A stretch of 63,813 bases of DNA, taken from contig NC_068985.1 in assembly GCF_001194135.2 (NCBI RefSeq), positions 105,761,103 through 105,824,915 of the forward strand, given 5' to 3'. Numbering within the stretch: position 1 is the first letter of the stretch; each line of letters opens with the position of its first letter. A program made the translations under genes and the position numbers. This DNA comes from Octopus bimaculoides (taxonomy: Eukaryota). Below the pieces are notes generated by a model. That model saw only the letters and a list, made by a program, of their open reading frames with translations, ran no database searches and was not told the origin of the DNA. Positions 21,457 through 24,829 of this stretch are shown piece by piece.

Positions 21457-21492
21457 CTGCCAAAGAAAAATGGCCGTGGTGTGGCTGGAGCA
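21457..21492 (-). CDS. Microexon E (36 nt, phase 2/2): APATPRPFFFG(S)
   Basis: ctctatctttatttctcattAG|TGCTCCAGCCACACCACGGCCATTTTTCTTTGGCAG|GTATGT; same length and phase as C and D, with Pro at the same three positions as in D. Confidence 0.8.
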
Positions 21493-22198
21493 CTAATGAG
21501 AAATAAAGATAGAGTAGACAATTAGATGACCAAATTTAAAGATGGACAAGACTTTTGTGCAAAAGAGCGTCTATTTTGTATAAAATTGGTGACGGCATAA
21601 GAATAGTGACTCTAAAGGGTTATCGTATCAGGAGAGGAGGATATTGGGATTGATACAGAAATGAAGGAAAAGCATTGAATGTTAAAAAACGGAATGGTGA
21701 TTGTGTTACAATAGTAGATATGGATAGAAACATATGAATGATGAGTATTTGTTACTACTGTAAGAAATATACACTCATAACCTTACAGTAGATAATATAA
21801 GTATAGATGTGGCAGTGAATATATTGACATTACTGATGGATGTACTACAATACAGTGATTGATATGTCACTATACTATGATAGAAAGCTAGACACTATAG
21901 TGATTAGTGTGTTGCTATATTATGGCAGACATACATGCATTACAGTGGTAGTAGTCACTGTATTGTGGTGGACATATAGACAGTATAATGCTGTATATTG
22001 CAATGATGGGAGACACATGTTACAATAGGATGCGATATTCTATACACTACAATAATACAAGATATGGGATATTGTACATTATACTGGATTGAGATATCAA
22101 GTTTACTTAAGTGCAGATCTTCTCTCACATGAAAGTTAAGGCTTAGTATGCAGTATAGTGCTAGAGAAAGCTGTTCTGGTGGGAGTGTATAGGTTTAC

Positions 22199-22234
22199 CT
22201 TGTATACACTGGTGGCAGAGGACTGTATGGTGTA
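22199..22234 (-). CDS. Microexon D (36 nt, phase 2/2): TPYSPLPPVYT(S), PPVY motif
   Basis: ttatttctattgacAG|TACACCATACAGTCCTCTGCCACCAGTGTATACAAG|GTAAAC; 21/36 nt identical to exon C by hand count. Confidence 0.85.
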
Positions 22235-22308
22235 CTGTCAATAGAAATAATACCATTTGATTCACAGATTCAATACAAACAAATGATGGACAAATGGACT
22301 GACAAACT

Positions 22309-22340
<32 letters not shown>

Positions 22341-23225
22341 CATTCACAGACACACACATATGTGCACACTTTATTGAAGAGGTGTATTAAAACTGAAGCA
22401 TGTCAGGAGTTGTGCCCATGCTGCTAAAGATCAAACTCACTCTCAATTGCATTGCACATTTAATTAATTAAAACTTCTTGGATTACCATATCAAGGGTGC
22501 TAATGCCCATTTTACAATGATTACATAATAAGGAGTAGCCCAACATTTTGCAATAATGCTTTAGTGAAAAGAAAATAAATTTTATATCTCCTCAATAGTG
22601 CTTTTACCCAGTCCTTTTACTCCAATCAACTTTGATATATAATATGGAACACATATTATGGCAGTTTAACTAATGATATATTGAATCTGCGAGTATGAGT
22701 CAGATAGGTAACCAACCATTCAATACTCAGAAGAATTAGTAGGGTAGAATGATTCACAAGTTAACTCTGAATATCACATTAATGTTGTTGGTTGAGAATC
22801 AACAAATAACTTTGGTCTCCTTTAATGGCACAGTGACACACAGTAACTGCACATATGAAGGAAAAGGTTTTTATTACACTCACTCTCCATTTAAGCAACA
22901 CCAAGCAAAAGCCCTCAAAGTTACAAAGTACTAAGAGATTTCATTCCCAGTCTCTGATGATTTCTCTTTGCAACCTCAGAAAAATAGCATTTTCAGAAGT
23001 GAATCGCAAAGGATATTTCTATTCAGAACTAAAAACAATATTTGAACCATTATCATTTGCTGACATTCTCCAAGGTTCAAATATGACCCACATTGTAAAC
23101 TTCTCACATATTTAGGTCAGAGACACATACATATATTCCATATCCTATATTACATGTAAGGCTCTGACTGGTTGCTAATGATTCACTCATCAACACATGA
23201 CAACTACTGGCTCACAGGCATAGTT

Positions 23226-23287
<62 letters not shown>

Positions 23288-23484
23288 CACTATTAGAATG
23301 GCTTCTGTTCTACCAAACAAACAAATTACAAACTGTCAACTGCCTAGTGCACACAATACAACCATATCTTTCCTTTGTATCCTTCCAAATCCTGCACTAA
23401 ACATGTTACATAATTATTCTTACTCAAAACTGAAGCTCTTTGAATTTTTACCAGTTCTATGTTGTTCCTTCAGCTATACACTTA

Positions 23485-23795
23485 CAAGGTGTATTGAAAA
23501 GTTCCTGACTTCAGGTAAAAGAAAATACAGGAGGATCAATGAGTTTTGATTTTATTCAATATATTCCCCTTTCAGATTTACATGCTTATTGCAGCAGTCC
23601 TTCAGTTTTTCTAAGCCCTGTAAAAGGTTGGGCTTCCAACCAGGCCGTTTGTGATACCCTTAAAGCCAAGAACTTTACAGCAGCCCCTTGTACAAGGATT
23701 CAACCCACACCACTCTCTGAGGACCTACAGAAACCATGGGTTCTAATCCTTTTCATTCAACCAACTAAGAAAAGGAAAAGATTTTTTCATCTATG
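23485..23795. mobile_element. Mariner-type terminal fragment
   Basis: TA + CAAGGTGTATTGAAAAGTTCCTGACTT resembles mariner TIRs, followed by mariner-like ttcaatatattcccc...ttgcagcagtccttcag. No partner TIR found. Confidence 0.5.
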
Positions 23796-24070
23796 ATCAG
23801 CTCTACTTGATCAGATCAGAAGAAAGTAAACGATTGAACAATTAAGAGCAACTCACAACTCTATTAATTTCAATTTTAAGTCAAGTGTAAAAGCCATGAT
23901 GCACATTCTGTCATTCAATGATTTGCTATGTAATATTACATTCATCTTGCCATCAGTTTTGTTTAAAGTCCACTACAGATGAAGTAGAAATATTTTTGCA
24001 TGTGATACTGTGGACCTAATACGATTTTTGATGCCGCAATGTTTTAATGTACACATGTACATATATTTGT

Positions 24071-24288
24071 TATTTCTTTATTGCCCACAAGGGGCTAAAC
24101 ATAGAGAGGACAAACAAGGACAGACAAAGGAATTAAGTCGATTACATCGACCCCAGTGCGTAACTGGACCCCGAAAGGATGAAAGGCAAAGTCGACCTCG
24201 GCGGAATTTGAACTCAGAACGTAACGGCAGACGAAATACCGCTAAGCATTTCACCCGGCGCACTAACGTTTCTGCCAGCTCGCCGCCT
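24071..24288 (-). mobile_element. SINE family A with 15-bp TSD TGTACATATATTTGT
   Basis: Head AAGGCGGCGAGCTGGCAGAAACGTTAG...GAGTTCAAATTCCGCCGAGGTCGAC; TSD at 24056-24070 and 24289-24303; CpGs retained. Confidence 0.9.
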
Positions 24289-24793
24289 TGTACATATATT
24301 TGTGTGTGTAAATGTGTGTATGAAGTGTGTGTGAGTGTACGAGTGTGTGTGCCATTTTGAACTGAGAGATGGAGTACCTAAATCTGTGTTGTTCTAATGT
24401 TATAGCGTGTTCTTAATGTATTAACATGTTTATGATGAGTGAACATATAGTACAGGGAAAGTGTTTGTTCATGTTGTAGTATTGTTGTAGTGTCCTGTTA
24501 TATGTTTCGGTATTTGTGGAAGTTTGGTAGACATCATACATGGTTGGCCGTGTCATTTAGAGCACAAAGTAGTCATTGACTGGTTTTCTAGTATAGTTAA
24601 ATCAGGATTTATACAAAGGTAACTCTCCACAGAATTTTGATTTAAGTGTTCCCACCATCCTAGAATGCTTCAATGTTGGTTGGGTTTATATTCAAGATAT
24701 ATCAGTAACCTACTGATATTATTAGAATGTAAGCAGCTTCACCAGGAACAAGGCAGTTGAAAAATTTAGGTAAGTGTTAGAAGTGTGGGTTAC

Positions 24794-24829
24794 CTGGAGT
24801 AAGATGGCGGGCCAGGGCTGTACTGGATA
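24794..24829 (-). CDS. Microexon C (36 nt, phase 2/2): IQYSPGPPSYS(S), PPSY motif
   Basis: tttctattttacttacAG|TATCCAGTACAGCCCTGGCCCGCCATCTTACTCCAG|GTAACC; GC-rich island in an AT-rich intron. Confidence 0.85.

What the first reader, a model, noticed from the sequence alone, without database searches (positions are those of the whole stretch)
21457..24829. Array of three paralogous 36-nt microexons, two carrying YSPxPPxY
Exons C, D and E are each exactly 36 nt and phase 2/2. C vs D are 21/36 nt identical and keep Y-S-P-x-P-P-x-Y while differing at synonymous third positions (AGC/AGT, CCG/CCA, TAC/TAT), the pattern expected under selection on the peptide. E matches D at 19/36 nt and keeps three prolines but has PFFF in place of PPxY, suggesting a duplicate that lost or changed its ligand. 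Inference: a short linear motif was amplified by tandem microexon duplication, one motif per exon.
Basis: partly seen in the sequence, partly recalled or inferred. Interest (0 to 1): 0.88.

Follow-up and report, generated by a model that had tools for sequence, protein, structure and literature searches.

The report
Cephalopod PPxY cassette microexon array
The tiny exons are real, alternatively spliced parts of an uncharacterised octopus membrane-protein gene, conserved from octopus to cuttlefish. Two of them each add one PPxY docking motif, so splicing sets how many such motifs the protein tail carries. This is a clean new example of a known principle, and the exons are already in RefSeq isoform models.

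Summary
Exons C (24794-24829), D (22199-22234) and E (21457-21492) lie on the minus strand. Each is 36 nt, phase 2/2, with good ag/gt sites. Identities are C-D 21/36 and D-E 19/36.

The gene matches Octopus bimaculoides LOC106881110. It encodes a two-helix membrane hairpin with a disordered tail that ends in two PPxY motifs, which are invariant across its mollusc/annelid family.

RefSeq isoforms of O. sinensis and O. bimaculoides already use C, D and E as cassette exons.

Sepia esculenta mRNA contigs carry orthologues of all four exons in three splice combinations. The Argonauta genome has all four. Annotated gastropod, scallop and annelid proteins have none.

Between Octopus and Argonauta only the exons still align. 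Between Octopus and Sepia, exon D and the YSPGPPSY core of C show 10 synonymous and 0 non-synonymous codon changes.

C and D are convincing paralogues (composition-controlled P = 6e-4). E is only suggestive (P = 0.026). B' is not demonstrable.

The likely function is inferred, not shown: splicing sets PPxY number (2, 3 or 4) and spacing for proteins with WW domains, such as NEDD4-type ligases.

The parts
34883..35233 (-). Exon A, coding part. ATG at 35233-35231; donor GGG|gtaagt, phase 0. Encodes 117 aa: N-terminus, two transmembrane helices (about residues 33-53 and 70-90) and a basic segment next to the membrane. An acceptor at 35278/35279 serves an alternative upstream first exon seen in some O. 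bimaculoides isoforms.
   Evidence: Orthologues. Helical hairpin in the AlphaFold2 model, pLDDT 70-88. Hydropathy and charge counts.
31018..31097 (-). Exon B, constitutive, 80 nt, phase 0 to 2 (LRNDSSNLCDIRVSESQDIAEIQECP + AG). It ends with the AG that every downstream exon completes into Ser or Arg.
   Evidence: Found by similarity to the gastropod segment FRNSSSLSLCDIQVTD. 100% identical in O. sinensis. Alignable to Argonauta.
29534..29566 (-). Microexon B', 33 nt, phase 2/2, cassette: (R)PTRPTTPTFL(S). It has no PPxY.
   Evidence: Present in O. sinensis isoforms X1/X3/X6/X9 and in O. bimaculoides isoforms. Located with ag/gt sites. Orthologues: Argonauta RSVRPNPPAFL and Sepia RPARPNPPLFL.
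24794..24829 (-). Microexon C, 36 nt, phase 2/2, cassette: (S)IQYSPGPPSYS(S). It carries one PPxY motif (PPSY).
   Evidence: RefSeq isoforms X1-X4, X6 and X8 contain it. Orthologues: Argonauta LQYSPGPPSYS and Sepia APYSPGPPSYT. The core has 5 synonymous and 0 non-synonymous codon changes against Sepia.
22199..22234 (-). Microexon D, 36 nt, phase 2/2, cassette: (S)TPYSPLPPVYT(S). It carries one PPxY motif (PPVY). In the listed isoforms it appears only together with C and E.
   Evidence: The Sepia peptide is identical 11/11, with 5 synonymous and 0 non-synonymous codon changes. An unannotated copy with ag/gt sites is in the Argonauta genome. It sits on the longest difference-free run (162 nt) between the two Octopus loci.
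21457..21492 (-). Microexon E, 36 nt, phase 2/2, cassette: (S)APATPRPFFFG(S). It is proline-rich, with PFFF where C and D have PPxY. It may be a diverged paralogue and may act as a spacer or as a different ligand.
   Evidence: O. sinensis isoform X7 = A-B-E-F. The Argonauta peptide is identical, with 2 synonymous changes. The Sepia counterpart is 45 nt, APGSPHSPRLSFFN. Similarity to D has P = 0.026.
15754..15964 (-). Exon F, coding part. Acceptor cag|C, phase 2; stop TGA at 15754-15756. Sequence: (S)RLRMYSDDPPPYDVV...EAPPSYDEFMRTSRL*. It holds the two constitutive PPxY motifs (PY1 PPPY, PY2 PPSY), whose P-P and Y positions are among the few invariant columns of the family alignments.
   Evidence: Invariant columns in alignments A2 and A3. 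The PY1 core is 16/24 and 15/24 nt identical to the cores of C and D.

Best explanation
The window matches Octopus bimaculoides LOC106881110, transcribed from the minus strand. The protein is a small two-helix membrane hairpin. It is followed by a basic segment next to the membrane and a disordered, probably cytosolic tail. That tail ends in two PPxY motifs that are invariant across the family.

Between constitutive exons B and F, cephalopods carry four symmetric (phase 2/2) cassette microexons: B' (33 nt), C, D and E (36 nt each). Every exon upstream of a junction ends in AG. Each microexon starts with T or A. So any subset splices in frame, and each junction reads Ser or Arg.

C and D each add one YSPxPPxY unit, so splicing sets the number of PPxY motifs to 2, 3 or 4. 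Inclusion of E changes the distance from the D motif to PY1 from 14 to 26 residues.

Shown here:
- The exons are real and alternatively spliced.
- They are under purifying selection on the peptide.
- They are older than the octopus-cuttlefish split.
- They are absent from annotated gastropod, scallop and annelid orthologues.
- C and D are paralogues.

Inferred:
- The array grew by tandem duplication of one founder exon. The founder may itself derive from the PY1 end of exon F, which reads YSDDPPPY.
- The PPxY units bind group I WW domains, most likely those of NEDD4-family HECT ligases. If so, the membrane-tethered tail would work as a ligase adaptor or activator whose strength depends on motif number, or as a signal for its own turnover.
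- E and B' serve as spacers or carry other ligands.
For: Exons and splicing:
- Exact coordinates, ag/gt sites and phases.
- Exact-sequence look-ups show that RefSeq proteins equal A-B-C-D-E-F, A-B-C-E-F, A-B-C-F, A-B-E-F and A-B-F, and that further isoforms carry B'.
- Three Sepia esculenta mRNA contigs from one species have identical 3'UTRs and differ only by 33-nt and 81-nt blocks: C alone, B'+C, and C+D+E'.

Conservation:
- All four microexons are 100% identical between O. bimaculoides and O. sinensis, inside difference-free islands of 114-162 nt, while the aligned locus as a whole is 90.4% identical.
- Octopus versus Argonauta: only the seven exons and one 3'UTR piece align in order.

Selection:
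- D has 5 synonymous and 0 non-synonymous codon changes, Octopus versus Sepia.
- The C core has 5 synonymous and 0 non-synonymous changes.
- E has 2 synonymous and 0 non-synonymous changes, Octopus versus Argonauta (all).

Paralogy:
- C and D share length, phase and motif register, with 21/36 nt identical and codon-shuffle P = 6e-4.
- Sepia C versus Sepia D is 25/36.

Lineage restriction:
- Annotated proteins of Haliotis (4 species), Gigantopelta, Patella, Babylonia, Pomacea, Physella, Bulinus, Elysia, a scallop and Capitella have nothing between B and F. The same holds for Biomphalaria, whose model has a short extra segment only at the A-B junction.
- The 52-kb B-F intron of Haliotis, which is in the same phase, holds no credible candidate exon.

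Context for a short linear motif:
- In the AlphaFold2 model, residues 116-190 have pLDDT below 50 and are coil, while the hairpin has pLDDT 70-88.
- The segment after TM2 has 7 K/R against 1 D/E, which points to a cytosolic tail.
- The two constitutive PPxY motifs (P, P and Y positions) are invariant across 13-16 family members, alongside few other invariant columns.

Precedents from papers:
- A 16-residue alternative exon carrying a PPxY controls Itch binding to ERBB4 CYT-1 (PMC4303208).
- Activation of Nedd4-family ligases needs a substantial array of clustered, membrane-tethered PY motifs (PMC5892558).
Against: - No binding, localisation or topology experiment exists for any member of this family. 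WW binding and NEDD4-family involvement rest on motif consensus and analogy only.
- Tissue specificity and inclusion levels are unknown.
- The Octopus isoforms are computed RefSeq models. I found no Octopus RNA contig that spans the array. Direct mRNA evidence comes from Sepia.
- The conserved Y-S-P that precedes each PPxY is not needed by a plain WW ligand, which hints at a further or different reader.
- Paralogy of E is weak and that of B' is not significant.
- No intron-flank similarity remains to prove duplication.
- Absence from non-cephalopods rests on annotations plus one scanned intron.
Confidence: 0.7

Rival explanations
1. C and D are not duplicates. They arose by independent exonisation, and selection for the same ligand motif made them look alike (convergence).
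For: The 200 nt on either side of C, D, E and B' show no similarity to one another (z at most 1.2). The exons are short. Much of the shared sequence is the motif itself, and the PY1 core of exon F is just as similar to C and D (16/24 and 15/24 nt) as they are to each other (15/24).
Against: C and D have the same length (36 nt), the same phase and the same register of the motif within the exon, and they are neighbours. They share residues outside PPxY (Y-S-P upstream; Ser junctions on both sides). The codon-order null gives P = 6e-4 in Octopus, and Sepia C versus D is 25/36. Lost flank similarity is expected for a duplication older than the octopus-cuttlefish split.
Confidence: 0.1
2. The conserved unit is not mainly a WW-domain ligand. 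YSPxPPxY could be a regulated phosphorylation module: Ser-Pro for proline-directed kinases or Pin1-type readers, Tyr for SH2/PTB readers. It could also be a heptad like the RNA polymerase II CTD (YSPGPPS against YSPTSPS). Splicing would then dose phosphorylation sites rather than PPxY valency.
For: Y, S and P at positions -5 to -3 of each PPxY are conserved in C and D of Octopus, Argonauta and Sepia with only synonymous change, and a plain PPxY ligand does not need them. E and B' keep [ST]-P sites but no PPxY. From memory: in Smad linkers, phospho-Ser/Thr-Pro sites next to a PPxY tune WW binding. So the two readings may combine.
Against: The P, P and Y positions of PY1 and PY2 are invariant across the whole family, whereas the S at -4 of PY1 is not (N in the scallop, Patella, Elysia and Argonauta; P in Capitella). 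C and D match the full PPxY consensus. Nothing here tests phosphorylation.
Confidence: 0.15
3. The exons are neutral additions: tolerated in-frame insertions in a disordered linker with no function of their own.
For: They lie in a region predicted to be disordered. All subsets stay in frame. The flanking residues of C and most of E and B' do vary between lineages.
Against: There are 10 synonymous and 0 non-synonymous codon changes over D plus the C core between Octopus and Sepia. The exons are the only alignable islands between the Octopus and Argonauta introns. Upstream intron flanks of 40-57 nt are also conserved for B', C and E.
Confidence: 0.03

Closest known systems
ERBB4 CYT-1/CYT-2 alternative exon (a 16-residue cassette carrying a PPxY)
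   Same: A short cassette exon in a cytoplasmic tail adds or removes a PPxY. In ERBB4 this changes binding of the WW-domain E3 ligase Itch and the resulting ubiquitination (PMC4303208). It is the same principle: splicing switches a WW ligand on or off.
   Different: ERBB4 has a single exon in a receptor tyrosine kinase, and the motif overlaps a PI3K site. Here there is an array of up to four cassettes, two with PPxY, produced by exon duplication. They are added on top of two constitutive PPxY motifs in a small hairpin membrane protein. There is no sequence relationship.
NDFIP1/NDFIP2 and other membrane-tethered multi-PY adaptors of NEDD4-family ligases
   Same: These are small multi-pass membrane proteins with several cytosolic PPxY motifs. 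Activation of Nedd4-family ligases requires clustered, membrane-tethered PY arrays (PMC5892558).
   Different: Pfam scans detect no homology to NDFIP. This protein has two helices rather than three, and its motifs are C-terminal rather than N-terminal. Motif number is set by splicing. Ligase binding was not tested.
Tandem exon duplication (for example the cases surveyed in PMC8373072)
   Same: Neighbouring exons of equal length and phase with significant similarity (C and D).
   Different: Surveyed duplicated exons mostly act as substitutions, one copy replacing the other (PMC8373072). Here the copies are additive cassettes that occur together in one mRNA: O. sinensis isoform X2 and the Sepia 249-aa form.
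Animal microexon programmes (neuronal microexons regulated by SRRM3/4 through the eMIC domain)
   Same: Very short, symmetric, highly conserved cassette exons in disordered regions, with conserved upstream intron flanks.
   Different: At 33-36 nt they exceed the strict 3-27 nt class. No UGC lies in the last 25 nt before any of the four acceptors (context print). Tissue specificity is unknown. A full-text search for 'microexons' plus 'cephalopod' found one paper, which I did not open.
TMEM100 / PIRT type two-helix hairpin proteins (Pfam PF16311, PF15099)
   Same: Recurrent weak matches of the hairpin region in several family members, with E-values from 8e-5 to 0.015.
   Different: All scores (15-23 bits) are below the curated cut-offs (30.6-34 bits). 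The matches cover only the hairpin region, not the PPxY tail.

Membership tests
Group I WW-domain ligand (PY motif) | Sequence consensus P-P-x-Y | tested here: met
   C has PPSY and D has PPVY. The constitutive motifs are PPPY and PPSY. E (PFFF) and B' (TPTF) do not meet the consensus.
Group I WW-domain ligand (PY motif) | The motif lies in an accessible, disordered, cytosolic region | tested here: inconclusive
   Prediction only. Residues 116-190 have pLDDT below 50 and are coil. The segment after TM2 has 7 K/R against 1 D/E, which favours a cytosolic tail by the positive-inside rule. No experimental topology exists.
Group I WW-domain ligand (PY motif) | Physical, Tyr-dependent binding to a WW domain | not testable with these tools
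   Needs peptide-binding assays.
Tandem exon duplication | Adjacent exons of the same length and phase | tested here: met
   C, D and E are each 36 nt and phase 2/2, and they are consecutive. B' is 33 nt and phase 2/2.
Tandem exon duplication | Sequence similarity beyond what composition explains | tested here: met
   Met for the C-D pair only: P = 6e-4 in Octopus, and 25/36 in Sepia. D-E is marginal (0.026), C-E is not significant (0.29), and B' is not significant.
Tandem exon duplication | Residual similarity of the flanking introns | tested here: not met
   z at most 1.2 for all pairs over 200 nt on each side. This is expected for an old event, so it does not exclude duplication.
Microexon | Length at most 51 nt (broad definition) or 3-27 nt (strict definition) | tested here: inconclusive
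   At 33-36 nt the exons fit the broad definition and not the strict one. Both definitions are cited from memory.
Microexon (neuronal, eMIC-regulated) | UGC motif close upstream of the 3' splice site, and neural-specific inclusion | tested here: not met
   No UGC lies in the last 25 nt upstream of the B', C, D or E acceptors (sequences printed). Tissue specificity is not testable here.
NDFIP family | Sequence homology to NDFIP1/2 | tested here: not met
   No NDFIP family appears in Pfam scans of the octopus protein or of 9 relatives. The resemblance is functional only.
TMEM100 (PF16311) | Score above the Pfam gathering threshold (34 bits) | tested here: not met
   Best scores are 15-23 bits in several members. 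A remote relationship of the hairpin remains possible but unproven.

The most novel reading that the evidence does not exclude
Coleoid cephalopods invented a combinatorial 'PY-valency code' and have kept it since before octopuses and cuttlefish split. Four independently skippable microexons allow up to 16 tail variants of a membrane adaptor restricted to lophotrochozoans. Regulated inclusion, possibly specific to tissue or neuron type, would set how strongly the adaptor recruits and activates NEDD4-family ligases. The conserved Ser-Pro next to each added PPxY would provide a second, phosphorylation-dependent level of control. The founder exon would have been copied from the PY1 end of the last exon.
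Probability: 0.2. Interest if true: 0.55.

Novelty: new member of a known kind. Interest (0 to 1): 0.35.

Why it matters
This is an unusually clean natural case of three processes acting together: exon duplication, symmetric phase and alternative splicing. Together they dose a short linear motif, one motif per 36-nt exon. The peptide has been held constant while synonymous sites and introns turned over.

It gives a handle on a conserved mollusc/annelid membrane-protein family that has no name, no Pfam domain and no literature. The handle is its PPxY motifs, two invariant across the family and up to two more added by splicing in cephalopods. It also offers a simple system for testing how PPxY number and spacing control enzymes with tandem WW domains.

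It does not overturn anything. The exons are already in RefSeq isoform models, and splicing control of PPxY motifs is known from ERBB4.

Tried and rejected
- Single ancestral exon in cuttlefish. I first thought the cuttlefish had one ancestral-type exon, because the Sepia exon matches C, D and E at 24, 26 and 21 of 36 nt. I rejected this when longer Sepia isoforms with D-like and E-like exons and with B' turned up. The Sepia exon is the orthologue of C.
- TMEM51-like family. This was an idea from memory. No Pfam support was found.
- Pfam and PDB searches. Only sub-threshold TMEM100/PIRT hits and chance matches to the CD3-zeta helix.
- Hidden microexons in Haliotis. The only PPxY-containing AG...GT candidates in the 52-kb B-F intron are two copies of a repeat (DDTIPPVYS and DDKIPPVYS). 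Both have the same poor acceptor (...tttgtagag, no pyrimidine tract), so I rejected them.
- B' as a fourth paralogue. The best offset gives 13-16 of 31 nt, P = 0.03-0.11, which is not demonstrable.
- Further exons. The other PPxY-coding triplets on the gene strand (29187, 30588, 21951) number 3, which matches the chance expectation of about 3. They are not among the segments alignable to Argonauta.
- Cuttlefish-type genomic contig (L007). The 10 kb upstream of exon F hold no microexon, so the E-F intron is presumably longer there.
- Octopus RNA contig spanning the array. None is on record.
- tRNA scan of the window. Nothing found.
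Full report
OBSERVATION

They lie on the minus strand.
- C is at 24794-24829 and encodes IQYSPGPPSYS.
- D is at 22199-22234 and encodes TPYSPLPPVYT.
- E is at 21457-21492 and encodes APATPRPFFFG.

Each exon is 36 nt. Each is preceded by a pyrimidine-rich ...ag and followed by gtaa/gtat. Each begins with the third base of a codon and ends with AG, which is phase 2/2.

The identity counts match the claim: C-D 21/36, D-E 19/36, and C-E 14/36.

The pattern is not chance.
- The octapeptide pattern YSPxPPxY is expected 0.0004 times per strand of this window. 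It occurs twice, only in these exons.
- Among 112 open AG-N36-GT candidates on the gene strand, background identity is 9.6 +/- 2.7. No unrelated candidate exceeds 14/36 against C, D or E.
- A stricter null shuffles codon order and so keeps the proline-rich composition. It gives P = 6e-4 for C-D, 0.026 for D-E and 0.29 for C-E.

THE GENE

Open frames on the minus strand revealed a first coding exon A at 34883-35233. It encodes a two-helix hydrophobic hairpin followed by a basic stretch. A last exon F (15754-15964) carries two more PPxY motifs.

A protein search with exon A found uncharacterised gastropod proteins of about 200 aa. Their middle segment located constitutive exon B at 31018-31097, which ends in AG at phase 2.

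Because B, C, D and E all end in AG, and C, D, E and F begin in the matching phase, any subset of the cassettes splices in frame.

No Pfam family reaches threshold. Only recurrent weak TMEM100/PIRT hairpin matches appear, and no solved structure is related.

EVIDENCE FROM mRNA AND ANNOTATION

A search with the spliced C-terminal half returned O. sinensis LOC115212097 isoform X7, which equals A-B-E-F. It also returned spliced 222-aa products from RNA assemblies that contain one 36-nt insert, APYSPGPPSYT.

Exact-sequence look-ups of my predicted combinations showed which ones exist as RefSeq proteins:

| Combination | O. sinensis isoform | Length |
|---|---|---|
| A-B-C-D-E-F | X2 | 249 aa |
| A-B-C-E-F | X4 | 237 aa |
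| A-B-C-F | X8 | 225 aa |
| A-B-E-F | X7 | 225 aa |
| A-B-F | X10 | 213 aa |

Isoforms X1, X3, X6 and X9 contain a further 11 residues, RPTRPTTPTFL. This is a fourth microexon, B', at 29534-29566 (33 nt, phase 2/2, with ag/gt sites).

The O. bimaculoides LOC106881110 isoforms carry the window's own variant (NLDEEE), which identifies the source of the window.

In the listed isoforms D occurs only together with C and E. The sequences A-B-D-F, A-B-C-D-F and A-B-D-E-F are not in the collection.

These Octopus isoforms are computed models. I found no Octopus RNA contig that spans the array.

OTHER CEPHALOPODS

A profile search added three key sequences:
- a 249-aa product, A-B-[APYSPGPPSYT]-[TPYSPLPPVYT]-[APGSPHSPRLSFFN]-F;
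- a 233-aa product, A-B-[RPARPNPPLFL]-[APYSPGPPSYT]-F;
- Argonauta hians isoform X1, A-B-[RSVRPNPPAFL]-[LQYSPGPPSYS]-[APATPRPFFFG]-F.

The three RNA contigs (L001, L004, L006) come from one species.
- They differ by 1-3 mismatches in the coding sequence.
- They share 339/339 nt of 3'UTR.
- They otherwise differ only by blocks of 33 and 81 nt.

Run SRR19578104 is Sepia esculenta juvenile RNA-seq (PMC9538352). So all four microexons are alternatively included in cuttlefish mRNA, and the array predates the octopus-cuttlefish split. From memory, published molecular clocks put that split at roughly 250-300 million years.

The Argonauta genomic locus also holds a D exon that is not annotated there. 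It has ag/gt sites and encodes TSYSPLPPVYT.

CONSERVATION COMPARED WITH THE INTRONS

O. bimaculoides versus O. sinensis:
- The aligned locus is 90.4% identical overall.
- B, B', C, D and E are each 100% identical.
- 7 of the 8 longest difference-free runs fall on exons: D 162 nt, A 144 and 143, E 127, C 119, B' 114 and B 109.

Octopus versus Argonauta: the only segments that align in order are the seven exons and one 3'UTR piece. Short upstream flanks of 40-57 nt are kept for B', C and E.

Codon changes point to selection on the peptide.
- D, Octopus versus Sepia: 5 synonymous, 0 non-synonymous; the peptide is identical at 11/11 residues.
- YSPGPPSY core of C, Octopus versus Sepia: 5 synonymous, 0 non-synonymous. 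The three replacements in C lie outside the core.
- E, Octopus versus Argonauta: 2 synonymous, 0 non-synonymous.
- E against its Sepia counterpart has diverged and carries a 9-nt length difference.
- B' keeps only the skeleton R-x-x-R-P-x-x-P-x-F-L.

ORIGIN

In the nucleotide identity matrix the orthologues group together: C with C at 24-31, D with D at 28-32, and E with E at 34. C-D paralogue values are 19-26, against a background near 10-13.

C and D are therefore paralogues that were already separate in the common ancestor of octopus and cuttlefish. E is only possibly a decayed copy, and B' cannot be shown to be one.

The introns flanking the four exons show no similarity to one another, as expected for an old event.

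The PY1 core of exon F (YSDDPPPY) is as similar to the cores of C and D (16/24 and 15/24 nt) as they are to each other (15/24). Exon F also has the same acceptor phase. So the founder exon may have been copied from the 5' end of exon F. This is inference.

DISTRIBUTION OUTSIDE CEPHALOPODS

The family occurs in gastropods, a scallop (Ylistrum) and an annelid (Capitella).
- Across 13 members the only invariant columns belong to the two constitutive PPxY motifs. Across 16 more complete members these columns stay invariant, alongside a few hairpin residues.
- None of the annotated non-cephalopod proteins has anything between B and F.
- In Haliotis rubra the B-F intron is in the same phase and is 52 kb long. 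It contains no credible PPxY cassette.

The array is therefore most simply a cephalopod gain. This rests on annotations and one scanned intron.

LIKELY MECHANISM

Predicted structure and topology:
- The AlphaFold2 model built with the family alignment gives a confident helical hairpin (pLDDT 70-88), a basic helix at residues 95-112 and an unstructured tail. Residues 116-190, which correspond to exons B through E, have pLDDT below 50.
- The segment after the second helix has 7 K/R against 1 D/E, which points to a cytosolic tail.

Effect of splicing on the motifs:
- Splicing gives the tail 2, 3 or 4 PPxY motifs.
- The motifs of C and D are 12 residues apart.
- Inclusion of E changes the distance from the D motif to PY1 from 14 to 26 residues.

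Precedents from papers:
- A 16-residue alternative exon with a PPxY governs Itch binding and ubiquitination of ERBB4 CYT-1 (PMC4303208).

I therefore commit to this reading: the protein is a membrane-tethered PY adaptor, or a self-targeting substrate, for WW-domain proteins, most likely NEDD4-type ligases. Its avidity would be tuned by cassette inclusion. WW binding, ligase identity, topology and tissue regulation are all inferred, not shown.

The conserved Y-S-P before each added PPxY suggests an extra layer of control, for example Ser-Pro phosphorylation. A plain WW-ligand model does not explain it.

COMPARISON WITH KNOWN SYSTEMS AND NOVELTY

The array works like the ERBB4 CYT-1 exon and like NDFIP-type multi-PY adaptors, but it is homologous to neither.

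It fits tandem exon duplication for C and D. However, the copies are additive cassettes rather than one-for-one substitutions.

It fits only the broad definition of a microexon, and it lacks the upstream UGC typical of eMIC-regulated microexons.

Full-text searches found no paper on either gene symbol, none linking microexons with PPxY in this way, and only one paper that mentions both microexons and cephalopods, which I did not open. The exons themselves are already in RefSeq.

Verdict: the feature is real and is a new member of a known kind. It is of moderate interest.

Noticed in passing
window 29534-29566 (minus strand): A fourth cassette microexon, B' (33 nt, phase 2/2, RPTRPTTPTFL), lies upstream of C in the same array and is not in the finding as given to me. 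It is conserved in Argonauta and Sepia as R-x-x-R-P-x-x-P-x-F-L.
   Followed up: yes
L005 10496-10531 (Argonauta hians genomic locus): An exon D orthologue (TSYSPLPPVYT) with ag/gt sites is present in the genome. It is absent from the only Argonauta isoform returned here.
   Followed up: yes
window 15919-15954 versus 24799-24822 and 22204-22227: The constitutive PY1 of exon F reads YSDDPPPY. It shares the Y-S-x-x-P-P-x-Y frame and 15-16 of 24 nt with the cores of C and D. The founder microexon may have been copied from the 5' end of exon F.
   Followed up: partly
window 15990-16200 (minus strand): A (GAT/GAC)n repeat just upstream of the exon F acceptor is in frame with exon F. It creates a spurious 181-aa poly-Asp open frame (15757-16299). 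RefSeq isoforms and Sepia mRNA show it is intronic.
   Followed up: yes
window 24070-24295, also 2537-2710, 5151-5318, 11630-11926, 12405-12683, 46346-46397: An interspersed repeat of about 160-230 nt, SINE-like, has a copy in the C-D intron and at least seven diverged copies (73-87% identity) elsewhere in the window. ARAGORN calls no tRNA.
   Followed up: partly
window 32897-33037, 26158-26264, 29260-29364: Three non-exonic islands without any difference between O. bimaculoides and O. sinensis (141, 107 and 105 nt). They have no open frame and are not alignable to Argonauta. They may be chance survivors or young regulatory elements.
   Followed up: partly
window 43780-44256 (minus strand); 701-2002 (minus strand): Open frames that look like transposable-element remnants: a mariner-like transposase N-terminal part, and a fragment resembling the end of a reverse-transcriptase protein with a Cys-rich motif. 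Both lie outside the gene.
   Followed up: no
window 703-1502, 19096-19740, 20499-20836, 31644-31813, 38017-38659, 42666-43156, 56916-57303, 60773-61640, 62573-62970 and others: There are twelve runs of N (assembly gaps). Two lie in the E-F intron and one in the A-B intron of the gene. None touches an exon.
   Followed up: yes
window 35278/35279 (minus strand): An acceptor (ttcag|GTTTCC) 45 nt upstream of the ATG serves an alternative upstream first exon (MASCSGGIRVFAVAYLPQKPGRAQ...) found in some O. bimaculoides isoforms. That peptide was not found as one continuous open frame on the gene strand of the window.
   Followed up: partly
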